A DNA stretch of 63,893 nucleotides, filler included, from Octopus bimaculoides (Eukaryota): the NCBI RefSeq assembly GCF_001194135.2. It is 6 parts of 5 records of this genome, joined end to end, with 100 filler letters (N's around TTAATTAATTAA, not from the genome) between each part and the next. Parts side by side here need not be neighbours in the genome. Positions count along the whole stretch, not along the records: positions 1 to 31,576 come from NC_068981.1; 5 more parts are not named here. One strand, given 5' to 3'. This document shows positions 2,044 to 31,576 of the stretch, one piece after another (the first letter of the stretch is position 1; each line of letters starts with the position of its first letter). The notes under the pieces are model-generated. The model was given only the letters and a program-made list of their open reading frames with translations. It did no database searches and had not been told where the DNA came from. Made by a program: the position numbers and the translations under genes.

Positions 2044-2241
2044 ATGAACAATTTCATGCAGACACATCAACTTTTCTCATGAACTAAGTTTTATACAGAC
2101 GCATTAATTATTTCCGTGAACCATGTCTTAAGCAGACACATTAATTATTCTGTTGAACAATGTTGCAGAGAGACACAAACCATTCTCATGAACAATGTCT
2201 CATACAGGATACATTAATTATTCTCATGAGCAATACCTCAT
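2044..2241. repeat. Degenerate minisatellite, ~37-41 bp unit, about 5 copies
   Basis: Repeated atgaacaatgtc..cagacacattaattattctc motif. Confidence 0.75.
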
Positions 2242-2739: not shown

Positions 2740-3680
2740 TCTGGTTGCCCAATGTAGTTCCCTAAAAATACAGAGTTTAACTGTTTTCAGATGTATTTAT
2801 CCGCTTCAGCTTTATTTCTTCGTTTTGTCTTAGTTCTAAGGTATTGAATTTCTATTATCGATGAAGGATGGTGGGTAATTCCTATCAGGGAATGTATTCT
2901 TTAATTCTTGAAGTCTTATGTTACGGGCGTTTTCATCAGGTAAAATTGGGCAGAACCTTTTGAATGGGTTATAAGGGACAAGTACTGAGGTGTGCATCAG
3001 ATGGCATGAATTGAAAGCAAGATAATTGTTTGAAGTCTAGATTCATAGTAAATGTTCATCTTTGTTTGGTTGTTGACATACTTTATTAGAATAGCTACAA
3101 ATAGGAGTTAATCTTGGCTATATTCCAAAGCGAATTGCATATTTTTGTTAATTCCATTAAGGAGTTGTTTGAATTCTTTTACTTTCTGTACGTTTTCCTC
3201 AATCGTCGAAGTACACAGACAGTTTTTTTTTTATATATTTAAACAAAGAGTTCGAATATTTTTGCAAGGATTTTTCGTACATCGTAATCTCTAGATAGCT
3301 CAACACGATTTGCATAGGAGGGGACTGTTTTCGTCCCCATCACAGTCACAGATTTCTATTGATAAATGTTGTCATTAGATGCAAAGCAGTTTTTCTCTAG
3401 AGGAAATTTTAGTCCTAGTATTATAAATTCATTTTCTATGTGTTGTCGATAAATTACCCAAACAGAACTCAATGGCCTCAATTTCAAAATAGTGAGGAAC
3501 ATACATTATGTCCTCATATATTACCCCTCGAAAGATGAAGAGCAGTAACAACACTAAGGAGACTTTAACCTAAATTCTGCTCTAGTTTCTTTATTATTCA
3601 TAAAAATTAGTTAAATCCATGCAAACTCCCACAGTTCTTAATAACTACGATAGAGCAATTACTTTAACATGTATTTGTAA
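2740..3680 (-). mobile_element. Penelope-like element reverse transcriptase relic (frameshifted, with stops)
   Basis: Manual minus-strand translation gives PHYFEIEAIEFC, FIILGLKF, VMGTKTVP (cf. TAMGTKxAP) and KEFKQLLNGINKNMQFALEYSQ, followed by LFVAILIK..NIYY (cf. LPFLDILI..TDIYYK). These are in the order expected for PLE RT. Confidence 0.8.
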
Positions 3681-4782: not shown

Positions 4783-5163
4783 TTTTACTCGTCTCAATCA
4801 TTAAACTGCGGCCATGCTAGAGTACCACCTTGGGAGATTTTAGTCGAACGAGCCGGCCCGAGTATACTTTAAGCCTGATACTTATTGCGTCTGTCTTTAT
4901 TGCCGAACCGCAATGTTGCAGGGGACGTAAACACAGCAACACCGGTTGTCAAGCGGTGGGGCGGGGTGGACAAACAGGCACATAGAAACACACACACACA
5001 CAATGGGCTTCTTTCAGTTTCCGTTTGACAAATCCACTCACAAAGCTTTTGTCGGTTCAGGGTTATAATAAAAAGTACTTTCACAAGGTGACACGCTGTG
5101 GGACCGAACTCAGAACTATGTAGTTTGGAAGCAAACTTCTTATCACATAGCCACGCACGCACC
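4783..5163 (-). mobile_element. SINE family B, near full length
   Basis: Colinear with 30497-30894 from tail to tRNA-like head, with internal (CA)n. Confidence 0.85.
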
Positions 5164-7554: not shown

Positions 7555-7912
7555 GGCGTTCCGTCAGTTACGACGACGAAGGTTCCAGTTCATCCGAAAA
7601 ACGGTCACAGCTTGCTCATGAATTTAATGTGCAAGTGGCTGAGCACTCCACAGACACGTGTACCCTTAACTTAGTTCTCAGAGAGATTCAGCATGACACA
7701 GAACGTGACAAGGCTGGCCCTTTGAATTACAGGTACAGCTCATTTTTGCCAACTGAGTGGACTGGAGCAACATGAAATAAAGTGTCTTGCTCAAGGACAC
7801 AACGCACCGCCGGGAATCGAACTCACGAATTCGATTCCCAGCAGCGCGTTTCTTAACAGATCAAAATATAGAAATTTCTTACGAAATTCACTAACCGCTA
7901 AACCACGCGCCT
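7555..7912 (-). mobile_element. tRNA-derived SINE family C, head interrupted by a small foldback
   Basis: Body gtgtccttgagcaagacactttatttc (minus strand). Tail shared with 17090-17474 and 35241-35497. Palindrome gggaatcgaa/ttcgattccc at 7812-7839. Confidence 0.8.
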
Positions 7913-7929: not shown

Positions 7930-8336
7930 TTCTTTTATTCTTTTATTGATTTCTGTCATTTTGATTGCGGCCATGCTGTAGCACCACCTTTAATCAAACA
8001 AATCGACTCTCAGGACTTATTCCTTGTAAGACTAAGTACTTATTCTATCGCTCTCTTTTTTCGAACCGCTAGGTTACCGGGTCGTAAAAACACCAACATC
8101 GGTTGTCAAGCGATATTGGTGGGGGACAAACACAGACACACAAACACACAAACACACACACACACATATATATACGATGGGCCTCTTTCAGTTTCCATCT
8201 ACCAAATCCACTCACAAGGCGTTGGTCGGCCCGAGGCCATAATAGAAGACAATTGCCCAGGTGCCACACGGTGGGACTGAACCTGGAACCATGTGAATGG
8301 GAATCAAGCTTTTTACCACACATCCATTCCTGCACC
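7930..8336 (-). mobile_element. SINE family B, full length
   Basis: Complete colinear match to the other family B copies; internal (CA)n(TA)n. Confidence 0.9.
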
Positions 8337-8483
8337 TATGTACCTACTATCTGCGGTAATTTAAATAAGTTCTATAATATCTGACCACGTATCAGTAATT
8401 TATCAGAATATCTTTCAATACAGCACTTCGAGCTGATGCTTCAAAGATGAGAAATGGTAATATCTGTTATCTCATTAATCATC

Positions 8484-11052: not shown

Positions 11053-11642
11053 ATTATATANNNNNNNNNNNNNNNNNNNNNNNNNNNNNNNNNNNNNNNN
11101 NNNNNNNNNNNNNNNNNNNNNNNNNNNNNNNNNNNNNNNNNNNNNNNNNNNNNNNNNNNNNNNNNNNNNNNNNNNNNNNNNNNNNNNNNNNNNNNNNNNN
11201 NNNNNNNNNNNNNNNNNNNNNNNNNNNNNNNNNNNNNNNNNNNNNNNNNNNNNNNNNNNNNNNNNNNNNNNNNNNNNNNNNNNNNNNNNNNNNNNNNNNN
11301 NNNNNNNNNNNNNNNNNNNNNNNNNNNNNNNNNNNNNNNNNNNNNNNNNNNNNNNNNNNNNNNNNNNNNNNNNNNNNNNNNNNNNNNNNNNNNNNNNNNN
11401 NNNNNNNNNNNNNNNNNNNNNNNNNNNNNNNNNNNNNNNNNNNNNNNNNNNNNNNNNNNNNNNNNNNNNNNNNNNNNNNNNNNNNNNNNNNNNNNNNNNN
11501 NNNNNNNNNNNNNNNNNNNNNNNNNNNNNNNNNNNNNNNNNNNNNNNNNNNNNNNNNNNNNNNNNNNNNNNNNNNNNNNNNNNNNNNNNNNNNNNNNNNN
11601 NNNNNNNNNNNNNNNNNNNNATATATATATATATATATATAT

Positions 11643-11879: not shown

Positions 11880-13300
11880 CATGCTTGAAGTGCCGGTACC
11901 TTCAAAAACTATCAAAAAAAAAATCTAGCTAAAATACACACGTTGCTGAAAATTTAATTATTTTTACTCCAGACCGGAAGAACATTTACTGCTTGATTAT
12001 TCCTATAATATACACGTAGGCTGTCGTGAGGGGATTTATGAATTGACCTTCCTTGGATCTATACGTGCAAATATTTGAATGGAGACGGGTGAACTTGTTT
12101 TGGACAGGATGTAAAGTTATTTGGACTTATATTTCCCCTATCTATGTATTTTGTTGACGAAGGAAAAAAGCAAATTTTTGCTTTAATCCAGAAATTCACA
12201 ATTAACGTGATGTCTATTTCTTGAGAACACACTCTTCGTGGTAAGGCGATTTGACGTCTATCTGTAGCATATTAGGAATCCACTTTGGTGGTCATTCCTC
12301 TTAATTTGTATGTAATATAACTTTTAATCTTCGGATTTTTTAAATATGCTAAGCCACTGGTTTTAATTGATTAATATCAATTTCTACCCTCATTATTTGA
12401 TTTTTTAATTATACATACGNNNNNNNNNNNNNNNNNNNNNNNNNNNNNNNNNNNNNNNNNNNNNNNNNNNNNNNNNNNNNNNNNNNNNNNNNNNNNNNNN
12501 NNNNNGATTATTTTGAAGAACTTACATCTAATGTTGCAATAATTCATTAGCATCTGTTGTCTATAACTGAGCAACTACGGGGTTTGACTTCCATGGCGAA
12601 AAGTAGAAATCTTCTGGTGAGTTTGTCTTTGAACGTTTGAACAATAAAATCCCTGTCCTTCAGATGTACAACTCTTGTTTTTGATCCAAATGAAACAACG
12701 AAAAAGGCACAATTGTGGATGCAAATAATTTTACAAGAAAATGTTGATTTTTATTATTTTCATAAAAAAAAGGGCTCAATTCTTTACGATATGGCTATAC
12801 TTAAAGGAGCATAACAACAAAACATTTCCATTCCGGCAGTAATTCAGGGGTTAAGTTATAAATCTAAAGACCTTTTCAATGATTCCTAATGTCATAAGGT
12901 TCCTCAATCATGGGATTCCAGTTTTCTTGTTGTTTTCTTTTTTCTCTCTTGAAGTCTTTCTCTAATCTGTAATAAATATTCAATGCATTTTTTCTTCATA
13001 TTTTCTCTGCTTCTCTCATGCTCTTTCTGGGAACCTTGCCCTACCATTTGTTCTCCCTTCTTGTTCTGTCTCTTGTTAACTCAGGTCATGTATCTATATT
13101 ATATAAGATTGCATCGCATAAGAGACTTAATCTTCATTATTTAGCAGGCGATAGTTATTTGTATGACATCTCATAAGTTAAAATGATAGAGGATTAGAAA
13201 TATAAATTTGGTTTCAATTGAATAACTATATTCTTCGTCATCTTTTTCTTAGCACTACTACAACCATTGCCATATCTATTAACCACCATCTCTAACAACA
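11880..13300 (-). mobile_element. Helitron N-terminal region relic, probably the same element as 8850-10800
   Basis: Minus-strand YCRNGNVLL (cf. CCxxGKVxL), KIICIHNCAFFVVSFGSK (cf. IRxYNSAFAFTSxG) and VVAQL. The 12980-13100 segment is homologous to 10190-10320. Confidence 0.55.
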
Positions 13301-13536
13301 TACTACGACAAATTTCAATAATTCACATATGTGAGTGATTACATGTCCATGCATTGTTCCTTATTCCTTCGGCTGGCATCGCCTCCATCCACTAAACACT
13401 CCCCTCCCCCTCTCTCTCTCTCTCTTTGCTTGCCACTTCCCTCAGCATATCTCTTTTTCCTTCGACTGAATGGGGTTTCTATGGACACTACAGATATACG
13501 TTGGTACCAACATATCAATATTATGGATATATTTCC

Positions 13537-13750
13537 AAGGCAGCGAGATAGCAGAATCATGAGCACGCCAAGCAAAATGCTTAGCAGCATTTCGACAGTC
13601 GTTTCATTCTGAGTTCAAGTTCCGCCAAGATTGGCTTTGTGTGTCATCCTTTCGGGGTTTATAAAACAAATACCAGTTAATCACTGGGGTCGATGTAATC
13701 GACTGACCTGCTCTCCCAAAATTGCTGGCCTTGTGCCAAAATCTGAAGCC
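13537..13750 (+). mobile_element. SINE family A, diverged
   Basis: ggcagcgag..gcagaatc, aaatgcttagc, ttctgagttcaagttccgcc, catcctttcggggt, ctggggtcgatgtaatcgact. Confidence 0.8.
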
Positions 13751-13789
13751 GCTATTACGAATATGCCAACAAATCTATTATTCGAGTTT

Positions 13790-13980
13790 ATTTGTTCTCC
13801 AAAGAGTCAATATCGGGACGTCTGTTATCAGCTGCAATTGGTAACCAAATTCCTCACCAGCCACTGTCTTGGAAAAGGAATACCGATGCACGAAGAAAAA
13901 CATGATGCTTATGACTGGAAAGCCTTTGAACTTAGACCCGGTCGATTAATGCTGACCTGAGGCGAAATAACAATAACTTC
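13790..13980 (+). repeat. Dispersed retroposon 3'-end repeat with (aac)n-like tail
   Basis: Ends gtcgattaatgctgacctgaggcgaaataacaataac; a related inverted fragment lies near 21736-21810. Confidence 0.35.
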
Positions 13981-14750
13981 TGCTCCATTGATCCAATGTC
14001 TTCGTACTTTCTTTATATATCAAAAGAATCTCATTATGGTATAAATTCTTTGTTTATTAATAACTGTCACGGCTTCATTTTTTTTATTTGTTGTAAGTCT
14101 TAAATGCGAAACGTATTCCTCTCACCAGATTAACTATTTATAGTTTTAATTAATTAGCACTGTTATGTCAACTCATTTCAGTCTCCCTGGTCAGTGTTTG
14201 GTTTACTCAAACATTGTTCAATAATGTTTACCTCTCCACACTATAAATGTAGTTTCGATGACTTAAAATTATCCTGCTCACTACATCATTCATGTTAGCA
14301 TTTATCCCATTATTCTTTTTTAAAGCATTTAGTTTTTCCCTTGCAGTGGAATGCAAAAATAATCCGTCTGTGAAATTCATGATTCCCTCCAAATTCTAAA
14401 TTGGCCGAAATATTAGAAGAAAAACAGGGTATAAATATGTGAAAAAAACTATTGATTTATCATTTGTTCACATGGCTTGCACATTTTAAAAGCAGAACTG
14501 CATTAAATCAAAAGGAAAGCTCATCACATAAAGAAATATGGAATAAAAGATGTCTGCTAGAAATGCATAAAACTTAATGAAACCATAAATCTAAGCTGTT
14601 ATAGGCAGTCTTTGGGGAATTTGGGAAACATTCTTGTAACTCCGTATCTGTATTTTATTCAGACTAAAAGTAGAATGATATCAATATGAAGTTAATGGAT
14701 TTAGTGAGACATTTCATCTCTCCTATCGCATTCTGCTTGCTTAGATTTTC

Positions 14751-17089: not shown

Positions 17090-17474
17090 CTCCGCCACTC
17101 TGTCGGTTGCGACAACGAGGGTTCCAGTTGATCCAATCAACGGAACAGCCTGCTTGTGAAATTAACGTGCAAGTGACTAAGCACTCCGCAGACACGTGTA
17201 CCCTCAAAGTAGTTCTCGGGGAGATTCAACGTGACACAGAGTGTGACAAGGCTGGACCTTTGAAATACAGGTACAACAGAAACAGGAAGAAAAAGTGAGA
17301 GAAAACTGTGGTGAAAGAGTACAGCAGGGTTTGCCATCATCCCTTGCCGGAGTCTCGTGGAGCTTTTAGGTGTTTTCGCTCAATAAACACTCACAACGCC
17401 CGGTCTGGGAATCGAAACTGTGATCCCATGACCGCGATTCCACTGCTCTAACCACTGGGCCATTGTGCCTCCTC
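17090..17474 (-). mobile_element. tRNA-derived SINE, family C tail with a different head and body; 9-bp TSD
   Basis: Minus-strand head ggaggcacaatggcccagtggttagagc..gtttcgattccc (A and B boxes). TSD agcaattgt at 17081-17089 and 17475-17483. Confidence 0.85.
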
Positions 17475-18028
17475 AGCAATTGTACCTAGAAAGAAATGAC
17501 GAATTTTGCTGAAATTTTTATGAACAAACTTTTTACTCGTTGAGACAGTTTGATTGTTATCAAAATAGTATTACAATATATGTTGAGAGAGTTTGATTGT
17601 TGTTGTAATTGTATTTGAAATGCTGTGTTTCATTGTGTTTCTGTGGATATTTCATTATTATGATATCGGCTAGGTTCTGTTGCTGCTTGTGTCTGTTTGC
17701 CATCCGTCTGATGTCTAAGCTATATCCCAAAGCTCTCTGGGTTGTGTTGCATGTGTGTGTGATTTTGAACAGATTGAGAGGCTGAGAAAGGAATGCACCA
17801 AAAGTTGATATGGTTATTGCAGCCGATTCCGTATGAAGTCGTGATTGGTCAGAGTTTGTTGATCATGTGAGTGATATTCTTTCTAGGCGAAGTCATGATT
17901 GGTCAGACTCACTGGTTATGTGGACAACATTCCAATGAATCATGACATTTGGGTGATTACTGAATATTCTCACTACATATATGTGTGTGTATGCATTTGC
18001 ATATGTGTGTGCGCGCACGCGCGCGTTT

Positions 18029-18240
18029 TTGTGTCTGTGTTTGTCCCCCCCCCACACACACACAGCTTGATAACCAGTATTGGCGTGTTTACGTCCCCAT
18101 AACTCAGTGGTTTGGCAAAAGAGACTGACAGAATAAGTACTAGGTTTAAAAATGTACTGGGGTCGATTCATTCAACTAAAAAGTTCTTCAAGGCAGTGCC
18201 CCAGCATGACCACAGTCTAATGGCAGACGCAAGTAAGAGA
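18029..18240 (+). mobile_element. SINE family B, 3' part
   Basis: gtgtctgtgtttgtcccc..cttgataacc..gtgtttacgtcccc..agaataagtactagg..ctggggtcgatt..cagcatgacc.cagtc. Confidence 0.8.
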
Positions 18241-18345
18241 TTAAATGTACCTGCGCAATCTCAGAGTTAGTCTTCATTGTATGTGCGAGTATGGGTGAAG
18301 GCCAATGCCGTAGTGGTTAAGGTGTAACGCTCGCATTCATAAGAT

Positions 18346-21470: not shown

Positions 21471-23280
21471 ATTAATACGAATTAACATTGAATGCTTACA
21501 TAATTTTAATAGATTCGTATAATTTTATTTAATGTTTTAGAAAATATTTCCTGTTCTATCTAATTATATATATTATGTCATACGTAGTCTTATTCAATAT
21601 CTTAACTGATTTAATCTCTCATATATTTGATGTCTTATCTAATTTCATTGAATAGTTTAATTTTCAGTGAGTGACTCGCTAAAGTATATTTAATGTCCCC
21701 TGGAATTTTATTCAATGTATTACATAACTGCACATGATGTTGTTTAACCCAAGATACACAGATCAAGCAGACCGATGAAGAATAGCTTTCCAACAGTGAC
21801 CGTCATGTGTTTTTGTGTATCATTGACTTCATTTTCAATATATCCTTCTTTATTTAAGATAGTTTGCTGTGATTTGTAGAAAGTTTCGTTGGTATTTCTA
21901 GCAAGTGAAGCTCCTGTTTGGAGGCTGTTTTGTTGGCTCGTTCCTTACATAATTATATTTAAAGCTATTTTTAATTATATTCATTGACTTATCTAATTTT
22001 ACTGCTTTACTTCATTTTAAATTTCTTTCGTTTCATAAAGCTTGTCTTCAAAACTTCTTTGCGTGTTTGTTTGCCAATGATAAGACATTCAGTTGCTGGT
22101 GAGCTAAAGAGGAGCTTTTTCTGGCATGATCATTCGATCTCCTAAAAGTAGCAACCTAAAATTAAAACATGGTCTGGTTTTCACATTTTTTATTATGGTA
22201 TTTTAACATTAAAAAAAAAATATTTTGTAATGTTCATAAAGTTCAAATAGCACTTTCATACATTCGTAGTAATCATCAGATTTCAAAATGTATTTAACTG
22301 ACGGTTGAGTTTTTGACATCTGTAGTAAAGTGACTGACTTCTTCGTTTTAATACTTCTTAGAAGGCACCAACAAGCTGAATTTTTCGAATATGATTCTGA
22401 CCAATTCACATACAGCTCAAACGTAACGGTTTGTCAGGCGTACTGATATTACTAGCATAGATCCCGCCTTTATTTTAACCAATTAGCTTGCGGTTTACAT
22501 GTAATAGTTTTAGGAGTGAGCAAACTCATTTGGTTTCGATTGTTTTTATTTTTTATGTAATATGTTTATATTCATATTTTAGAGATATTTTTTAACCCAC
22601 GTCATTAACTGGTTGTTATATTTTTGTTGTTATTTCCGTTCAGAACAGGTTTGAACATTTTAATAAACCATTTTTCTTTTATATTTCTTCCAACCTCACT
22701 TGTGTCTTGTAGTTTATGGAAAAGAAAAAATTAGAAACAGTTCCTGACCACATGTTTCTATATATTCGCTCAGCGGAACTTGGCAAACATTGGTGTTGCG
22801 CATTTGTTGTCTGTAGACTTGTGAGTGTTCCAATAATGCATTCCCTGTCTCGCCAATATATAGGATCTCACAATTTGGGTACTAAATGCAGTAGATAAAA
22901 TTTATGCATTTACAGTTCATATCTGCATTTGTGAAAACCTGTCCATTTTTTGTTCTAATGGATCTACCAGTATGCACGTATTGACACGTTCCTCATCTGT
23001 TAACATTACACTTGGATACTGTCAATGTTTTATCCTATTTGTTCGTGTTGAATCTTGCCTTTGTTAATAGTTTCTTTAGATTATGTGGTTGCCTTTTGCT
23101 TAAGGTAAGTGTTTTATTAGTTATGTTTTTTTTAATTTTTCACTCTATCTATAGAGACAGTTAACAATGAAAATAACACACTGCTAACACAAAGGAATCC
23201 ATTGTATTGACTTATAAGTCTTTAATATACTCGGTCGTCTGTTGTGGTTGCAAAACGAAATATGGTGTCTCTGTTAGTAA

Positions 23281-23321
<41 letters not shown>

Positions 23322-23733
23322 TTAAACAAAACAGCACCATAGCTCTATTACAGTTGTTCATATTACACATCAATGAGTATTAATGACAAAAATCAAGACA
23401 ATAACGGAGATGAGGGTGAGAGACATTATTTTAGCTCTCACAAAAACAACAATATTATACAAAACCCAAAAAGCAAGAGGAGAAAACTGTAATTGGAGAT
23501 TTTATAGAAAAATAAACATGATTCTCACGGTGGTGCACCAGCATGACCGCAACCACTTGGCTGAAACACATAAATAAATAAATAAATGATGTTTGCAGTT
23601 TGTCATAGACTTAGAGCAATATTTTATTAATATATTTTGAAGAATGACGACTGTCGTATGAAGGCTTGGCAGGTGGTGCTTACAGCAAGCCATGTATTCA
23701 ACGAATGATACAGCAACTCAACACCTGGCTTAA

Positions 23734-23957
23734 CCCTTTCGTTATTGTATTTATTTTGAGATGCTCACTGTTTCTTTCAATTACTTTTAAATATAACAAG
23801 GAATTTAGTAAAATAACTTAGTTATCATTCAGCTAGTGTTAGGAACATAAATTGTGACTAAGGTTTCGTGGAAGATTTTAATTCAAAACTTATGAAAACA
23901 AGACATTTGTACTCAGAGACAGAGGTGATTTCAGCCAGGTTGGTATCAAAAGCGCTA
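23734..23957 (-). mobile_element. piggyBac-like MITE family D (TTAA target)
   Basis: ttaa-ccctttcgtta at the left end; reverse complement of 24235-24456; degenerate right end aaaagcgctaa. Confidence 0.8.
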
Positions 23958-24234: not shown

Positions 24235-24456
24235 CCCTTTCAATACCAACCCGGCTGAAACCAGCTTTGGTTCTGTAGTACAAATGTCTTGTTTTCATAA
24301 GTTTTGAATTAAAATCTTCCACCAAATCTTAGTCACAATTTATGTTCCTAACACTAGCTGAATGATAACTAAGTTATTTCACTAAATTCTTTGTTATATT
24401 TAAAATTAATTGAAAGAAACACAGAGCATCCCAACAGAAATGTGGTAACAAAAGGG
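24235..24456 (+). mobile_element. piggyBac-like MITE family D, complete with TTAA duplication
   Basis: ttaa-ccctttcaatacc ... ggtaacaaaaggg-ttaa. Confidence 0.85.
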
Positions 24457-24619
24457 TTAACAAATGATTAATTTAACCCTTTGGAGCAGTGAAGGTATGA
24501 AAATTGACGAGGTCGTGAAAGACAATGAAAGGATTCTGATGAACTTGGCAGACTGATTGATTGACTAGACAATTAATCAAAGTAATTGAGTAGTTTATTA
24601 TTGAAATGGTTAATTAGAT

Positions 24620-24825: not shown

Positions 24826-25599
24826 AGAAGTGAAATAGAACCAGTGTGTGTTTATTATTGGCATAATGACCCTCTCAAAATACAACACAATCTGTTATAA
24901 CACATGAATTCCCTTCAAGAATCTTGCAAATCCAGTACAACAATTCACTTTTAGAAAGGGTGCAAGATTTAAAAAAACGAATAGGTCACCAGTTATGTAG
25001 TAATGTTACAGCTAGAGAAATACCTAAGATATCAGAATGACATGGTGTCGTTCATTTATTATTGAAATAACTTTTAGAGTTATAGTAATAACCAATTCAC
25101 ATACAAAATACATCTACAAATGATTTGCAAAATAAAATGACATGTTTCATAATGCTTATTCTAAAAATTCCCGGATTTGGTGTGATTTACAAAACATGCG
25201 AGTTAACTGTTAGAAATAATATTTTTCCCTTATTATTCGCTGAATAGAATTGCTTCAGTTAAAAACAATGTTTATGCTATCAGTTTGTGATAAATCAATA
25301 CATAATATCTACAGCAGGTGAGAATCAACGTAAATGGAATCCCACACCATGCCATTAGATATCCGGCTCATTTTGTTCAAACTGTTTTATAAAGCTGTTG
25401 TTTTATATTTATAAGAGAGACATCAAGATTTATGTATCACTTATCCTAATCATAGTTTACCACACGTCCAGCAGGGTCTCTAATATATAAAAGTGATCAT
25501 AGAAACAAAGAATAGATGCTGCAGTATACAAGTAATAAAGGCTAATTACAATACACTATATTTGAAGGTTTTTGTTGGGTTTTCTTTTTACCCACAAAG

Positions 25600-26040
25600 T
25601 TAAACACATTCCGACCGTGACCACTTTGTTCAGACAGTTTGGAATCGTTTGCTTTTGTTGAGCCACAAAGTCAGCTCTAAATGGGTGGAAGTATGATCAA
25701 AGACAGTCTGCCAATTGTGGATGTACTGCAGAAAGTCACTAAACTATGATATTCATCTTGAGAAGCATCTCATATAAATGTACAGTGCTAAAAAAGCAGA
25801 GAAATGTAATGGTAGCAGATCTGGCAATTCTATCCAGCATTTGTGGTAGAATTGCCAAAGCTGGGATTTCTGCATACTTGCACATCATCAGTAGCAAGCA
25901 TCCACTATCAACTGCAGGCTTAGACAAATTTCACTTCTACCAATATAGAAAAACAGTGATATACAAATCATTGGTGTCACAGGTAGCTGGTAGACTGAGT
26001 AAAAATTTGATATTAGTGACAAATCCAGTACTACTATTGT
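25600..26040 (-). pseudogene. Possible hAT-family transposase relic
   Basis: IKFLLSLPATCDTNDLYITVF..NLSKPAVDSGCLLLMMCKY..ITFLCFFSTVHL loosely follows the hAT pattern FL..LP..TTxxDIF..LSKxxG..TDGA..M..HC..H; in-frame stops. Confidence 0.3.
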
Positions 26041-26084
26041 CACTAATAATGAATTCTGTTCTATATTTAAGAGATGAGGAATAA

Positions 26085-26297
26085 TGTACCTTATTCACAT
26101 TTTACAGATATTTGTCCTCGTCTTGTTTCAGCTGATATACCCTCCAGCCTTCATCAAGTGTCTTGGGGAAATTTCCAGCCTGGGTTCTTATTCCTAAGGT
26201 ATTTTTTGATGTTATTATTATTCAGGTCACTGCCTGGAATCAAACTCGGAATCTTGAGGTTAGCAGCCCGCGCTTTTAACCACAATGCCATATTCCC
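26085..26297 (-). mobile_element. tRNA-headed SINE with hammerhead-derived 3' half (cleavage site deleted)
   Basis: Minus strand: gggaata-TGGCATTGTGG (A box)..ct-gct-aa loop..GAGTTTGATTCC (B box)..(aat)n..caagacac-TTGATGA-a-ggctg-gagggtatat-cagct-GAAAC-aagacgaggac. 18 nt are lost between two aaac motifs relative to the plus copy. Confidence 0.8.
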
Positions 26298-26427
26298 GTG
26301 TGCTTATGGCGTAGGGGTTATACTGTCTTGCTTTCTATGTCCAAGTAGTCTGCTCTCTCTAATTAAATAAAAATTAATAAAATGTTTTCATTTCATAAAA
26401 TTCAAATCAATATATATTAACCACTGA

Positions 26428-26572
26428 TAATCACATCGAAAAGGTTCGAAATATCCCTAAGACACCTGATGAAAGCTGGAGGGTATATCAGCCGAAACGT
26501 TGTGTTAACAACAAACAAGATGAGGACAAATATCCGTCAAATGTAAATAATGTAAATAATGTGAATAATGAA
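26428..26572 (+). mobile_element. 5'-truncated copy of the same HHR-SINE with (tgtaaataa)n tail
   Basis: acatcgaaaa fused to ggttcgaaat (internal deletion), then HHR, aacaacaaacaagatgaggacaaatatc and about three 9-mer tail repeats. Confidence 0.8.
26461..26506 (+). ncRNA. Type I hammerhead ribozyme motif
   Basis: gacac-CTGATGA-a-agctg-gagggtatat-cagcc-GAAA-cg-TT-gtgtt. Stem I gacac/gtgtt, stem II gctg/cagc, palindromic AACGUU stem III, GUU site. A.C mismatch at the stem II base. Confidence 0.8.
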
Positions 26573-27529
26573 TTCTATTTATAACCATTTGATCTTTTCA
26601 AGATAGCTTATGTCAGACTCATATTCTCTGAGATGTCCTTTCTTTTCTTTTTAAAGAGAGTAAGAAATGATTTTGAGGAAGGTTAGTCTGCTTTATCTAG
26701 CCGGTTGAATTATCAGGTTTAGGGTTACTCAACGACCCTTAGAATTAGTTGCAGCTGTAATAGAGAAGGATAGATTTGTTTGATGTATGAGAGCAACACC
26801 TAGGAAGGAAATATTTGATTATTTCTTTACATTGTTAATTTGGAAACCCAAATCCCCAATCATCCCCAGAATTCCCACATCCAAAGATATTCACAAATTC
26901 GTAATTGAATTGCTACGAGTAAAAATACTGTTAAACAGTTGAGAGTCTACCTAGAACTCTTCTTACAACATTTGTATTCAGTTTACATTGAAATATAGAA
27001 TAATTGAATCATTTTACTGAGATGTTTCATAAAGTATTCACAGAACTCCCAATAGCAGTTGTAAGAAAAGAATGTCATCTGAATCACTAATGACAAAGAA
27101 ATTGTTATTGCTTGGTAGACCTGGATAATTCTTATTAACCCAAGGCATAGTTAAAAAAAACAAACCCAGTTTAAATGACATATTTGATTAGCAATTATGA
27201 TAAAAACCATACCATCTTTAATAGACACCAATCTGTTCTAAGACTTACACATAGCAGAGAATATATTGAAGCCGATGATCTGGTTGCTACATAGAACAGC
27301 CTCAGAGACTGCATTAAATATATTTCTTGTTACTCTCTGTCAGGACTTCCATCAGTCAAAGGTGGGTGGAATATAAAAAAAAATGAATAGAATGTTTAAA
27401 CCATGTTTTTTAAAGGAAATTCTTTATGCGTATCAAAATATTTTACTGTATATTACTATTTACAATTGTCCAATCGTAGAGAATATTCTGCTAGATGAGG
27501 GCGGGGAGGTAATAAAGTAACCAGTTAGA

Positions 27530-27740
27530 GATTTTAGTAGAAGAAGAAGAAGAAAAAGAATAATAATAAAAGGAAGAAGGAGAAAAAGAAGGCGAATATT
27601 AATAATAATAATAATAAGAAGAAGAAGAAGAACAACAACAACAAGACGAAGAAGGCAAAGGCAACGAAGAAGAAGAAGAAGAAGAAGAAGAAGAAGAAGA
27701 AGAAGAAGAAGAAGAAGAAGAAGAGCAACAACAACAACAG
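27530..27740. repeat. (AAG)n/(AAT)n/(AAC)n compound microsatellite
   Basis: Direct observation. Confidence 0.95.
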
Positions 27741-28554
27741 GAGTGTTGCAGCTCAAGAATAATAAAAAATATCCTTTGGTTAAAAAGCCAACTTTTTTCC
27801 ATTTCTTCCAATATTCCAGTTTATTCTCTCATCAATGTCTTGGAACATATATTTTATTATTCTATTTTGTATTTCATTTATACTTCTTTCTTTCTTTTTT
27901 TTTCTTCTTCTTCGGTGTAATATTTTTCACTCCACTGCTTTGTGAATTTCTATCATATACTGCCCTAGAGCATTTTCTCAAAGTCTCTATAGCTACATGA
28001 TAGAAATGAATAAATTTTCCGAAAGTGCCAAGAATGTAATTAATGCGACAGATTACCAAAAAAAGGTTTATACTCATGGTTCCTTGTGGTTCCTTATCCA
28101 ATTGATTTTTAAAATATCGATTTGTAGAGAAGTAAAGTCATAGACGTTTTTTTTCCCCAGAATTTTTCCAATATTTTTGTAACAATTCTGTCTTTCCGTA
28201 TTTTATGCAGCCATTGAATATTTCTATCTCGTACATTTGTTGAGGAAATGTGGTGTAAACAGTTGATATTTACAGCACAAAATATGAATATGATGTCTTG
28301 CTTTCTATGACCAAGTAGTCTGCTCTCTCTAATTAAATGAAAATTAATAAAATGTTTCCATTTCATAAAACTCAAATCAATATATATTAACCACTATATT
28401 GATCAATATATCAATCAATTTCCACAAGCATATCAATCAACTGATCAATCATTCAGATATTGCGGTATGAAACATCAGAATAAAAAAATATAATTATGAC
28501 GGAGATATTCAATTCTGACTGACTTGTTTAATGCAGGCAGTCAGCCATATCAGC

Positions 28555-28740
28555 CTTAACAAAAACCCTGCCATGTTTCTGTCGAAATACACTGACTACG
28601 TTTCAATTAATTTAGAAAATTATGAAGAATTTAATAAAATAACTTTGTAAGTATTAAGCTGGTATTTGGCACATAAATTAACTTGGCGGAGCTATTTGAT
28701 AACACAAAACGCTCTTAAATTCACTTCAGATTGAAATTTA
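28555..28740 (-). mobile_element. Diverged family D-like MITE fragment
   Basis: tttcaattaattt..gaagaatttaataaaataacttt..attaagct..acataaatt resembles 23770-23860. Confidence 0.5.
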
Positions 28741-28879: not shown

Positions 28880-29390
28880 NNNNNNNNNNNNNNNNNNNNN
28901 NNNNNNNNNNNNNNNNNNNNNNNNNNNNNNNNNNNNNNNNNNNNNNNNNNNNNNNNNNNNNNNNNNNNNNNNNNNNNNNNNNNNNNNNNNNNNNNNNNNN
29001 NNNNNNNNNNNNNNNNNNNNNNNNNNNNNNNNNNNNNNNNNNNNNNNNNNNNNNNNNNNNNNNNNNNNNNNNNNNNNNNNNNNNNNNNNNNNNNNNNNNN
29101 NNNNNNNNNNNNNNNNNNNNNNNNNNNNNNNNNNNNNNNNNNNNNNNNNNNNNNNNNNNNNNNNNNNNNNNNNNNNNNNNNNNNNNNNNNNNNNNNNNNN
29201 NNNNNNNNNNNNNNNNNNNNNNNNNNNNNNNNNNNNNNNNNNNNNNNNNNNNNNNNNNNNNNNNNNNNNNNNNNNNNNNNNNNNNNNNNNNNNNNNNNNN
29301 NNNNNNNNNNNNNNNNNNNNNNNNNNNNNNNNNNNNNNNNNNNNNNNNNNNNNNNNNNNNNNNNNNNNNNNNNNNNNNNNNNNNNNNNNC

Positions 29391-29584
29391 ACCACCTTTA
29401 GTCAAACAAATCAACCCCATGACTTATTCTTTGTAAGCCTAGTCCTTATTCTATCAGTCTCCCTTGGCAAACCGCTAAGTAATAAGGACGTAAACACACC
29501 AGCATCGGTTGTCAAGCGATGTTAAGGGTACAAACACAGACACACAAACATATACATACATACACACATACATACACACACACT

Positions 29585-29624
<40 letters not shown>

Positions 29625-29771
29625 CGATGGGCTTCTTTCAGTTTCTATCTACCAAATTCACTTACAAGGCTTTGGTCAGCCCGAGGCTATAGTAGAAGAC
29701 ACTTGCCCAAGGTGCCATGCAGTGGGATTGAACCCAGAACCAGGTGGTTGGTAAGCAAGCTACTTACCACA
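29391..29771 (-). mobile_element. SINE family B, truncated by a gap and at the head
   Basis: Colinear with 30497-30894. Confidence 0.9.
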
Positions 29772-30496: not shown

Positions 30497-30894
30497 TGTT
30501 CTTTTACTTTTTTACTTGTTTCAGTCATTTGACTGCGGCCATGCTGGAGCACCGCCTTTTGTCGAGCAAGTTGACCCCAGAGCTTAGTCTTTGTAAGCCT
30601 AGTACTTATTCTATCATTCTCTTTTGCCAAACTGCTAGGTTACGGGGACGTAAACACACCAGCATCAGTTGTCAAGCGATGTTGGGGGACAAACACATAC
30701 ATACATATACATATACATATATATACATATACGACGGGCTTCTTCCAGTTTCCATCTACCAAATCCATTCACAAGGCTTTGGTCGGCCTTAGGCTATAGA
30801 AGAAGACACTTGCCCAAGGAGCCATGCAGTGGGACTAAACCAGGGACCATGTGGTTGGTAAGCAAGCTACTTACCACACAGCCACTCCTGTGCC
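30497..30894 (-). mobile_element. SINE family B, full length, best-preserved copy
   Basis: Minus strand: ggcacaggagtggctgtgtggtaagtagc head, ccttgggcaagtgtcttc CORE-like block, internal microsatellite, tail gactgaaacaagtaaaa. Confidence 0.92.
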
Positions 30895-31095
30895 TCTGTC
30901 CATATATAGAATATGAGGGATTTAGTTCACTGGTGATCTAAACGAATAAGTACGTTGTGTAAGTACTATAATTGGTCATCCATTAGGTTCCAAGTTCACA
31001 GCTGAGGCTGGATCTAAGGATACATAGTAGGCTTCCAAGTAAGCAGGTATATACTTGTTGCCCTTATTCCTCTAATACATACATACGTATATATA

Positions 31096-31576
31096 TCAGA
31101 GATATCTGCACTTAAATGCATACAAAACGATGAAACAATAATAATTAAACAAGCAGACAAAGTGGGTGCAATCGTTATCATGGATGTGGAATACTACAAG
31201 GATTCAGTTGAGGAACAACTAAAGGATACAACCTTCTATTGTGAAATACCCTCGAATATAGACCACCACATCATGAAGAAGATCAACCACCTAGTTTCTA
31301 AACACTACAAGTCACTCAGTGACAACGAAAGAAACTACATCACCAACTTCGAACCAAAACCCAGTAACTTTTACGGCTTACCCAAAATACATAAGTCAGA
31401 AGATATTCAACAGGCAGTAAAAGAACAAGGAAGTGAATACATAAAAGTGCTACATCCAAAAGATTTAAAACTTAGACCAATTATAGCTGGCCCAGTATGC
31501 CCTACTCACCGTCTAAGCAATTTCATCAACATTCTTTTAAAGCCACTATGTACGTACATACCCAGCTTCATTCGGG
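31096..31576 (+). mobile_element. Penelope-like element ORF fragment (N-terminal to RT core), open up to the gap
   Basis: SEISALKCIQNDETIIIKQADKVGAIVIMD..FYGLPKIHK..LRPIIAGPVCPTHRLSNFINILLKPL. The IIKxADKG, FYGLPKIHK and LRPI motifs are diagnostic of PLE RTs. No stops in 160 codons. Confidence 0.92.

What the first reader, a model, noticed from the sequence alone, without database searches (positions are those of the whole stretch)
26085..26572. tRNA-headed SINE whose 3' half is a hammerhead ribozyme
Seen: the minus copy (26085-26297) has a tRNA-like head (A box TGGCATTGTGG, CT-GCT-AA loop, B box GAGTTTGATTCC), an (AAT)n linker and an HHR whose cleavage site was removed by an aaac-microhomology deletion. 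The plus copy (26428-26572) lacks the head but keeps the full HHR (gacac-CTGATGA-a-[a/g]gctg-gagggtatat-cagcc-GAAA-cg-TT-gtgtt) and a (tgtaaataa)n tail. Together they reconstruct a roughly 240-nt Pol III-type element with a self-cleaving module. Established: most SINEs borrow a LINE 3' end; the closest precedent I recall is the Schistosoma Sm-alpha HHR repeat. Inference: this is a SINE that pairs a Pol III promoter with a PLE-derived ribozyme tail and is mobilised by PLEs rather than LINEs.
Basis: partly seen in the sequence, partly recalled or inferred. Interest (0 to 1): 0.9.

Follow-up and report, generated by a model that had tools for sequence, protein, structure and literature searches.

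The report
Octopus ribozyme-tailed retroelement, inverted pair
Two inverted copies of a short octopus mobile element, each carrying a decayed Penelope-type hammerhead ribozyme, went in as a single insertion, and one copy has a tRNA-like head, so it may be a SINE copied by Penelope-like elements, although this locus alone cannot prove that.

Summary
The minus copy (26080-26299) and the plus copy (26442-26568) share a roughly 125-nt 3' module. That module is a minimal hammerhead ribozyme (HHR) of the type found in Penelope-like elements (PLEs), followed by a (TGTRAATAA)n tail.

- **HHR is not chance.** My descriptor finds it once in the window and never in 1000 shuffles.
- **Head is not chance.** The A box/B box pair with 44-nt spacing occurs twice in the window, against 0.03 expected.
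- **New finding: one insertion.** The pair is flanked by a direct repeat (13/13 exact, about 20/21 extended) and lies head-to-head with tails outward. A related PLE in locus L122 has the same layout.
- **Both ribozymes are decayed.** The plus copy has an A.C mismatch at 10.1-11.1. The minus copy has C3>U, 11.1 C>U and the 18-nt deletion.

PLE-type mobilisation is therefore well supported. The SINE claim is not established. Only one copy carries the head, no other octopus DNA with copies could be reached, and ARAGORN and Rfam see no tRNA. An A-rich stretch and a 7/8 8-mer repeat around the head allow a separate small SINE or a one-off chimera.

Verdict: partly supported. It is a new variant of a known kind, of moderate interest.

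The parts
26045..26065 (.). Left target-site duplication, AATAATGAATTCTGTTCTATA
   Evidence: Direct repeat of 26564-26583. It is 13/13 exact, then about 7/8. A common substring of at least 13 nt occurred in only 3 of 2842 control window pairs, and I did not inspect those pairs, which were sampled every 10 nt and may be the locus itself.
26066..26079 (.). 14 extra bases between the left duplication and the tail of the minus copy
   Evidence: These bases are not shared with the plus copy. They are compatible with the one-sided extension described for PLE insertions (PMC8557442). That link is an inference.
26080..26181 (-). Minus copy, shared 3' module: body, dead HHR (26162-26125) and tail
   Evidence: 85-88% complementary to the plus copy (pairs I13 and I24). 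It carries C3>U, 11.1 C>U, and the 18-nt AAAC-bounded deletion of the cleavage site.
26182..26224 (-). AAT-rich/A-rich linker
   Evidence: The sequence is TGAATAATAATAACATCAAAAAATACCTTAGGAATAAGAACCC. It has no significant match to the plus copy.
26225..26299 (-). tRNA-like head with A box (26290-26280), CTGCTAA loop (26266-26260) and B box (26246-26236)
   Evidence: This is one of only two A/B-box pairs in the window, against 0.03 expected. It has a 20/25 match to tRNA-Ser(GCU) as I recalled it from memory. ARAGORN and Rfam find no tRNA.
26300..26441 (.). Filler between the two 5' ends; 26324-26425 is a 94% copy of 28294-28395
   Evidence: the repeat finder family D16, with boundaries read.
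26442..26568 (+). Plus copy: body, complete min-HHR layout (26461-26506, cleavage predicted after U26501) and (TGTRAATAA)3 tail
   Evidence: Position 10.1 is A opposite C11.1. The inferred G10.1 ancestor folds into helices I and II (-13.6 kcal/mol), whereas the extant copy does not.
26564..26583 (.). Right target-site duplication, AATAATGAATTCTATTTATA, overlapping the last AATAA of the tail
   Evidence: The 5-nt overlap with the tail fits priming by microhomology, which is an inference.
22608..23139 (-). 5'-truncated PLE fragment (linker plus GIY-YIG endonuclease, with stops and a frameshift)
   Evidence: 41% identity to the C-terminus of the L123 PLE protein, E=2e-29, aligned to its last residues. 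A (TA)n run at 23284-23330 lies just upstream.
22569..22590 (-). PLE 3'UTR stretch resembling the element's tail
   Evidence: It matches the minus-copy tail 20/22. It is the best non-self match in the window, scoring 34 against 24 for the next. The plus-copy tail matches only 17/22.
31018..31575 (+). N-terminal part of another PLE open reading frame, cut by the window edge
   Evidence: 85% identical to an Octopus vulgaris reverse-transcriptase-domain protein, P0001.

Best explanation
One retrotransposition event placed two copies of a short non-coding element head-to-head into an AT-rich target, duplicating about 13-21 bp of it.

**Shared 3' module.** It is about 125 nt: a Penelope-type minimal hammerhead (helix III reduced to the palindrome ACGU, so it can form only between two RNAs), followed by about 60 nt that end in (UGURAAUAA)n. 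This copies the layout of a PLE 3'UTR. I infer that it is what the PLE reverse transcriptase and GIY-YIG endonuclease recognise in trans.

**Priming.** I infer that each of the two staggered DNA ends primed on the tail of a separate RNA. That would give tails pointing outward, 5' ends meeting in the middle, and a patched 144-nt filler.

**Head.** The longer arm runs on into a tRNA-like head with A and B boxes. I favour the view that the head was part of the template RNA. That RNA would be a Pol III-transcribed, tRNA-headed, SINE-like transcript with a PLE-derived tail. Whether it is an established family or a single chimera is open.

**Current state.** Both ribozymes have since decayed.

**Shown:** the motifs, the inverted pair, the flanking duplication and the mutations.
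**Inferred:** Pol III transcription, PLE enzymes as the engine, double priming, and head-tail linkage.
For: - The HHR descriptor gives 1 hit in the window and 0 in 1000 shuffles. The same descriptor finds HHRs just after PLE ORFs in L122. L123 has one 110 nt after its stop codon.
- The PLE min-HHR traits listed in PMC4209133 are met. An extra nucleotide follows A9 in both copies, helix I is 5 bp, and 15.2-16.2 is palindromic.
- The flanking direct repeat is 13/13 exact. Only 3 of 2842 control pairs reach that length.
- Tails point outward and heads inward.
- In L122, a PLE whose N-terminal protein is 56% identical to the window's has the same inverted 5'-truncated arrangement (761-nt arms, 100% identical).
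- PMC4209133 reports paired min-HHRs 100-700 bp apart on opposite strands.
- The distance from cleavage site to 3' end is about 62 nt here and about 60 nt in L123.
- The A/B-box pair at tRNA spacing is expected 0.03 times per window.
- The roughly 220-nt sense strand has no TTTT run.
- The best non-self match of the minus tail lies in a PLE 3'UTR, starting 11 nt after the stop codon.
- O. vulgaris has 31 recently active PLE families and 893 unclassified SINE families (PMC13282606).
Against: - Only one copy has the head. No other copy of head or module occurs in the window or in L001, 52 kb in all.
- ARAGORN and Rfam find no tRNA and no hammerhead.
- The head unit ends in an A-rich run and is bracketed by ATAAGCAC/ATAAGAAC (7/8). 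This would fit an independent small SINE, although my rough estimate (not computed) puts the chance of such an 8-mer match at about 0.15.
- The copies show no significant similarity upstream of 26442. The plus copy therefore cannot be shown to be a truncated SINE rather than a stand-alone module.
- The window's PLE 3'UTR has no HHR, and the plus tail matches it only 17/22.
- The two copies differ by about 13%, against 6% for the filler duplicate. They may not have come from identical templates.
Confidence: 0.5

Rival explanations
1. One-off chimeric retrocopy. The PLE reverse transcriptase was copying the 3' end of a PLE or of a PLE-derived RNA. It then switched template to the A-rich 3' end of an unrelated small tRNA-like SINE RNA and copied it to its 5' end. 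Head and ribozyme are joined only at this locus, and no such SINE family exists.
For: An A-rich stretch (ATCAAAAAATA) sits exactly between the head and the module. Only one head-bearing copy was seen. From my own knowledge, template-switch chimeras such as U6/L1 are established for LINE reverse transcriptases.
Against: Composite SINEs often keep an A-rich linker, so the linker does not discriminate. There is no independent copy of the head unit in 52 kb.
Confidence: 0.2
2. Nested or adjacent independent insertions. The inverted pair consists of two 5'-truncated PLE 3' ends, or stand-alone HHR modules. A small tRNA-derived SINE with an A-rich tail later inserted next to the left arm with its own 8-bp duplication.
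For: ATAAGCAC (26307-26300) and ATAAGAAC (26191-26184) bracket the head plus linker. PMC4209133 regards most dispersed min-HHRs as truncated PLEs. SINEs make up 11.6% of the O. vulgaris genome.
Against: By my rough estimate (not computed), a 7/8 8-mer match in AT-rich DNA is expected by chance about 15% of the time. Eight non-A bases separate the A-run from the putative duplication. The head lies in the same orientation as the arm and within 43 nt of it. Upstream of the module there is no PLE coding or 3'UTR sequence.
Confidence: 0.2
3. A foldback or MITE-type DNA transposon whose long terminal inverted repeats happen to contain a hammerhead-like motif.
For: There are inverted arms of about 100-120 nt, flanked by a direct repeat.
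Against: From my own knowledge, a duplication of 13-21 bp is far longer than those of known DNA transposon superfamilies. The arm ends are simple-repeat tails of unequal length, which is typical of reverse-transcribed 3' ends. The motif meets several PLE-HHR traits that are not needed for an inverted repeat. No other copy occurs in the window.
Confidence: 0.04

Closest known systems
Minimal hammerhead ribozymes of Penelope-like elements (Cervera & de la Pena 2014, PMC4209133; Lunse et al. 2017)
   Same: CUGAUGA and GAAA cores, an unpaired nucleotide after A9, a 5-bp helix I, and helix III reduced to a palindrome (ACGU) so that only a dimer can form it. The motif also occurs as a pair on opposite strands a few hundred bp apart. 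It has the same layout as the HHRs found after PLE ORFs in L122 and L123.
   Different: Here the module is attached to a tRNA-like head rather than to PLE coding sequence. The G10.1-C11.1 pair is broken in both extant copies. No octopus PLE with this HHR was found.
SMalpha / Sjalpha SINE-like elements of Schistosoma (Ferbeyre 1998; Laha 2000; summarised in PMC6765202)
   Same: A short non-coding retroelement that combines Pol III promoter boxes with a hammerhead ribozyme.
   Different: From memory, SMalpha carries a canonical type I HHR with loop-loop contacts. PMC6765202 reports that it occurs largely in tandem arrays and that cleavage separates the promoter from the rest. Here the HHR is the minimal dimer type, it sits near the 3' end, the copies are dispersed and inverted, and there is a simple-repeat tail. 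Sequence similarity was not tested.
Animal non-LTR retrozymes (PMC7229834; bioRxiv 10.64898/2026.07.22.740005)
   Same: Non-autonomous elements that carry an HHR and are thought to be mobilised by PLEs and derived from their pLTRs.
   Different: Retrozymes are head-to-tail tandem repeats of 170-400 nt with canonical type I HHRs, and they are expressed as circular RNA. No tandem unit is present here, and retrozymes have no Pol III head.
Classical tRNA-derived SINEs with a LINE-derived tail
   Same: A tripartite plan (tRNA-like head with A and B boxes, a body, a 3' tail with simple repeats), flanking duplications and 5' truncation.
   Different: The tail module resembles a PLE 3'UTR with a ribozyme rather than a LINE 3' end. 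The insertion is an inverted double copy.

Membership tests
PLE-type minimal hammerhead ribozyme | Conserved cores CUGANGA and GAAA | tested here: met
   The plus copy has CUGAUGA at 26466-72 and GAAA at 26494-97. The minus copy has UUGAUGA (C3>U).
PLE-type minimal hammerhead ribozyme | [quoted passage not shown] | tested here: met
   An A is present in both copies, at 26473 and 26150. The trait is listed in PMC4209133.
PLE-type minimal hammerhead ribozyme | G10.1-C11.1 base pair | tested here: not met
   The plus copy has A.C and the minus copy has G.U. A G-C pair is inferred only for the common ancestor.
PLE-type minimal hammerhead ribozyme | Palindromic 15.2-16.2 / minimal helix III, followed by a U-H cleavage site | tested here: met
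   A-CG-U then U17 at 26497-26501 in the plus copy. This stretch is deleted in the minus copy.
PLE-type minimal hammerhead ribozyme | Short helix I (4-5 bp) and helix II of at least 4 bp | tested here: met
   GACAC pairs with GUGUU. (G/A)GCUG pairs with CAGC(C/U), giving 4-5 bp. The ancestor's minimum-energy fold contains both helices.
PLE-type minimal hammerhead ribozyme | Location in a PLE pLTR or 3'UTR | tested here: inconclusive
   It is not attached to a PLE ORF here. PLE fragments lie 3.5 and 4.5 kb away. The tail resembles one PLE 3'UTR 20/22.
PLE-type minimal hammerhead ribozyme | Self-cleavage, as a dimer | not testable with these tools
   This needs in vitro transcription of monomeric and dimeric constructs.
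Rfam hammerhead families (type I, II, III, HH9, HH10) | Match to a curated covariance model | tested here: not met
   No hit at E<=10 on a 91-nt search. My reading, from memory and not tested here, is that those models expect a helix III hairpin, which is absent in this type.
tRNA-derived SINE | Internal Pol III A and B boxes at tRNA spacing | tested here: met
   TGGCATTGTGG matches 10/11 and AGTTTGATTCC matches 9/11, with 44-nt spacing. This is one of two such sites in the window, against 0.03 expected.
tRNA-derived SINE | Recognisable tRNA homology or cloverleaf | tested here: inconclusive
   ARAGORN and the Rfam tRNA model find nothing. There is a 20/25 local match to tRNA-Ser(GCU) recalled from memory, with shuffle p about 0.004. 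By hand, 3/4 D-stem, 3/5 anticodon-stem and 3/5 T-stem pairs remain.
tRNA-derived SINE | Multicopy family in which head, body and tail are linked | tested here: inconclusive
   One head-bearing copy and one head-less copy are present. There are none elsewhere in the window or in L001. No further octopus DNA was reachable.
tRNA-derived SINE | 3' tail shared with an autonomous partner | tested here: inconclusive
   The match is 20/22 to a PLE 3'UTR for one copy and 17/22 for the other. The layout equals the PLE 3'UTRs in L122 and L123.
PLE-style insertion | Inverted 5'-truncated copy head-to-head with a longer copy, tails outward, flanked by duplicated target | tested here: met
   The comparator is L122, and the description is in PMC8557442.
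Non-LTR retrozyme | Head-to-tail tandem repeats of 170-400 nt with a canonical type I HHR | tested here: not met
   TRF finds only the 9-nt tail array and a 10-nt repeat in 25500-27300.

The most novel reading that the evidence does not exclude
This is a bona fide octopus SINE family. A Pol III tRNA-like head is fused to a PLE 3'UTR module, and PLE enzymes rather than LINEs mobilise it. It would be the first explicit SINE-PLE partnership. The dimer-only hammerhead would serve as the recognition and RNA-pairing element. Pairing of two RNAs through the palindromic helix III would explain why PLE-type insertions so often arrive as head-to-head double copies.
Probability: 0.3. Interest if true: 0.75.

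Novelty: new variant of a known kind. Interest (0 to 1): 0.5.

Why it matters
PLE minimal hammerheads number in the thousands in many animal genomes, and their role is unknown. SINEs are assumed to depend on LINEs.

A tRNA-headed element with a PLE ribozyme tail, caught as a PLE-style double insertion with a clear target duplication, would do three things:
- It would show that PLE enzymes can serve Pol III-transcribed parasites.
- It could account for some of the 893 unclassified SINE families of Octopus vulgaris.
- It would give a compact substrate (about 240 nt) for testing what the ribozyme does in PLE retrotransposition.

If the head is only a neighbour, the locus is an ordinary pair of PLE-derived remnants.

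Tried and rejected
- **Rfam.** Gathering thresholds and E<=10 on 801-, 111- and 91-nt stretches gave only noise hits. ARAGORN found nothing.
- **More copies through proteins.** The antisense ORF that spans the minus copy found nothing among 5.8 billion clustered proteins. Among 1.84 billion representatives it gave only one marginal hit, E=5e-4 with no aligned stretch.
- **More octopus PLE 3' ends.** The window's endonuclease fragment found only three distant non-octopus hits.
- **Exact look-ups.** Two window ORFs are not on record.
- **DNA pattern scans.** The metagenome scan returned bacterial or phage HHRs and termite-host min-HHRs, but no octopus copy. None of the termite-type HHRs has a tRNA-like head within 400 nt upstream. 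A specific 24-mer gave 0 hits in GTDB genomes and in IMG/VR.
- **Full-text search** for four sequence strings from the element found nothing relevant.
- **Paralogous empty site.** None is present in the window or in L001.
- **Extending homology upstream of 26442.** Three models were tried, and none was significant (p = 0.16-0.41).
- **L001.** The related PLE copy loses homology before its 3' end, and the 3' flank of a second PLE-like ORF shows no HHR.
- **Rejected as artefact.** The long inverted repeats I1-I7 are runs of N.

Full report
**Source.** The window is octopus DNA. A truncated PLE open reading frame at 31018-31575 is 85% identical to an Octopus vulgaris protein, P0001. A 20.5-kb O. 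vulgaris locus, L001, shares several of the window's repeats.

**Observation.** Read on the minus strand, the left copy has these features:
- an A box at 26290-26280;
- a CTGCTAA loop at 26266-26260;
- a B box at 26246-26236, 44 nt downstream of the A box;
- an AAT-rich/A-rich linker at 26224-26182;
- a body that starts at 26181;
- the 5' two-thirds of a hammerhead at 26162-26125;
- a tail that runs to 26080.

The right copy starts at 26442. It carries the whole hammerhead layout at 26461-26506 and a 9-nt tail array, which TRF reports as 3.4 copies at 26540-26570. The 18-nt gap in the minus copy corresponds to plus 26499-26516 and is bounded by AAAC on both sides.

- The plus copy has A opposite C at the 10.1-11.1 pair.
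- The minus copy also has C3>U and 11.1 C>U.
- Nothing upstream of 26442 is significantly similar between the copies.

**Is it more than chance?**
- I wrote a relaxed minimal-hammerhead descriptor. It requires CUGANGA, helix II of at least 4 bp, GAAA, a palindrome of 0-6 nt, U-H, and helix I of at least 4 bp. It hits only 26466(+) in the window and nothing in 1000 block shuffles. The same descriptor finds hammerheads just downstream of PLE ORFs in L122.
- An A box (at most 1 mismatch) with a B box (at most 2 mismatches) at 40-50 nt spacing occurs at two sites only. One is this site, and the other is a different SINE head at 17462(-). Shuffles give 0.03.
- Curated models do not see either part. 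Rfam and ARAGORN report no hammerhead and no tRNA, even on stretches of about 100 nt at E<=10.
- For the hammerhead I think this is expected. My understanding, from memory, is that the Rfam models need a helix III hairpin. Here helix III is only A-CG-U.

**What kind of hammerhead is it?** Cervera and de la Pena (PMC4209133) list the traits of PLE minimal hammerheads:
- a conserved G10.1-C11.1 pair;
- palindromic 15.2-16.2;
- a short helix I.

The octopus motif has the extra A in both copies, ACGU at helix III, and a 5-bp helix I. The G-C pair is broken differently in each copy (A.C and G.U). I therefore infer it for the ancestor. With G restored, the minimum-energy fold contains helices I and II (-13.6 kcal/mol). 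The extant plus copy folds otherwise.

Two PLEs related to the window's PLE provide a comparison. Their N-terminal proteins are 54-56% identical to the window's.

| Locus | Hammerhead sequence | Position after the ORF stop | Distance to the element's 3' end |
|---|---|---|---|
| L122 | AGCC-CUGAAGA-UCCGA-AAAA-UCGGA-GAAA-UGCA-UU-GGCU | about 240 nt | about 150 nt |
| L123 | CCGU-CUGAUGA-...-GAAA-GCGC-UA-ACGG | about 110 nt | about 60 nt |

In the octopus plus copy, the predicted cleavage site lies 62 nt before the flanking repeat.

Termite-gut metagenome contigs hold min-HHRs with the same helix II (CUGAUGA-U-GGCUG...CAGCC-GAAA-CAUG-UU). None has a tRNA-like head within 400 nt upstream.

**New finding: one insertion.**
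- AATAATGAATTCT occurs at 26045-26057 and again at 26564-26576, in direct orientation. It extends to about 20/21 (26045-26065 and 26564-26583).
- In 2842 control pairs of 50-nt windows at the same spacing, only 3 reach a 13-nt common substring. I did not inspect those 3. Because sampling was every 10 nt, they may be the locus itself.
- Between the repeats the order is as follows: 14 extra bases; the minus copy with its tail outward; a 142-nt filler; the plus copy with its tail outward.
- The filler's core, 26324-26425, is a 94% copy of 28294-28395.
- This is what results if both DNA ends of a staggered break prime reverse transcription on RNA 3' tails.
- It is also the structure described for PLEs, namely an inverted 5'-truncated copy next to the full copy and an extension at one end (PMC8557442).
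- L122 shows it directly, with 761-nt arms that are 100% identical and lie head-to-head inside a (TA)n run.
- PMC4209133 also notes pairs of min-HHRs 100-700 bp apart on opposite strands.

**Partner.**
- The window holds a 5'-truncated PLE fragment on the minus strand at 23139-22608. It aligns to the last residues of the L123 PLE protein (41% identity, E=2e-29).
- Starting eleven bases after its stop codon, 22590-22569 matches the minus-copy tail 20/22.
- This is the best non-self match of that tail in the whole window, scoring 34 against 24 for the next.
- The plus-copy tail matches only 17/22, and that 3'UTR has no hammerhead.
- I treat this as a lead, not as identification of the partner.

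**Is it a SINE?** This is the weak point.
- Only one copy carries the head.
- No other copy of either part occurs in the window or in L001.
- Every route to more octopus DNA failed.
- The head unit ends in ATCAAAAAATA and is bracketed by ATAAGCAC and ATAAGAAC (7/8). By my rough estimate, which I did not compute, such an 8-mer match has about a 0.15 chance expectation.

Three readings remain open:
1. An established composite SINE, about 0.3-0.35.
2. A one-off template-switch chimera, about 0.2.
3. A small tRNA-SINE nested beside a pair of PLE remnants, about 0.2.

In favour of a common template RNA:
- The head has the same orientation as the arm and lies 43 nt from the module.
- The roughly 220-nt sense strand has no TTTT run.
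- O. vulgaris has 893 unclassified SINE families and 31 recently active PLE families (PMC13282606).

The head matches tRNA-Ser(GCU) 20/25 from the D loop to the anticodon loop.

**Comparison with what is known.**
- Pol III boxes combined with a hammerhead in a short retroelement are known from the schistosome SMalpha and Sjalpha elements (PMC6765202, PMC8490949).
- PLE-dependent non-autonomous hammerhead elements are known as retrozymes (PMC7229834; bioRxiv 10.64898/2026.07.22.740005).
- Dispersed min-HHRs are known in many animals.
- Full-text searches that combined hammerhead with octopus, cephalopod or SINE-PLE partnership found no description of this element.
- The combination seen here is a tRNA-like head, a minimal dimer-type PLE hammerhead near the 3' end, a simple-repeat tail, and a dispersed double insertion. 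If the head belongs, this is a new variant of these known kinds.

**Verdict.** The PLE-type ribozyme and PLE-style mobilisation are well supported. SINE status is unproven. Both ribozymes are now inactive by sequence. I score interest at 0.5.

Noticed in passing
window 17395-17475 (-), with body repeats at 7607-7737 and 17145-17275: A second, better preserved tRNA-like SINE head (TGGCCCAGTGG ... GTTTCGATTCC, 44-nt spacing) with a different body. It is the only other A/B-box pair in the window.
   Followed up: partly
window about 195-510, 1767-1952, 4783-5151, 7930-8338, 18030-18245, 29395-29771, 30499-30895; L001 3992-4405: An abundant element of about 400 nt with an internal (CA)n/(TA)n run. 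It is present in at least seven copies in the window and in O. vulgaris L001 at 67-85% identity. It is probably one of the major octopus SINEs.
   Followed up: no
window 26324-26425 and 28294-28395: A 102-nt duplicate at 94% identity. One copy forms the core of the filler between the two element copies, and the other lies 1.97 kb downstream without any element sequence. It may be templated filler from a nearby site.
   Followed up: partly
window 26069-26080 versus 26116-26125: The 14 extra bases at the left end contain AAGAGATGAGGA. This is nearly the reverse complement of TCCTCGTCTT inside the minus copy, so the tail could be enclosed in a hairpin. The same 9-mer, AGATGAGGA, occurs in the plus copy. 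It could be a snap-back or template-jump trace, or it could be chance.
   Followed up: no
window 23730-23913 and 24277-24460; also 24337-24445 versus 28571-28679: A 184-nt inverted repeat, 92% complementary and 363 nt apart, with a weaker third copy. It looks MITE-like.
   Followed up: no
window about 11100-11620 and 28881-29390: Two assembly gaps (runs of N). The repeat finder reports them as 530-547-nt inverted repeats (I1-I7), and they appear as X-filled ORFs. This is an artefact.
   Followed up: yes
window 2839-3036 (-): A short stop-free stretch (…YLAFNSCHLMHTS…) that looks to me like a piece of a PLE or reverse-transcriptase thumb region. It was not tested.
   Followed up: no
L001 14336-14790: Three tandem copies of a unit of about 150 nt. 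The array begins inside the last codons of a GIY-YIG-containing ORF (13282-14367) in O. vulgaris. No hammerhead core is present in it.
   Followed up: no
L122 6502-7262 and 9496-10256: A young PLE in an unidentified eukaryote from an ENA metagenome. It is a full copy plus an inverted 5'-truncated copy, with arms 100% identical. Each arm has a min-HHR, and the whole lies inside a (TA)n microsatellite.
   Followed up: yes
L045, L067, L072, L052, L065, L074 (termite-gut metagenome contigs): Minimal hammerheads with the same extra nucleotide and the same GGCUG/CAGCC helix II as the octopus motif, and an ACAUGU palindrome. They are presumably from host insect DNA.
   Followed up: partly
window 2052-2234 and 27532-27768: A 37-nt tandem repeat of about five units, and a long (AAG)n/(AAC)n/(AAT)n microsatellite block.
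   Followed up: no
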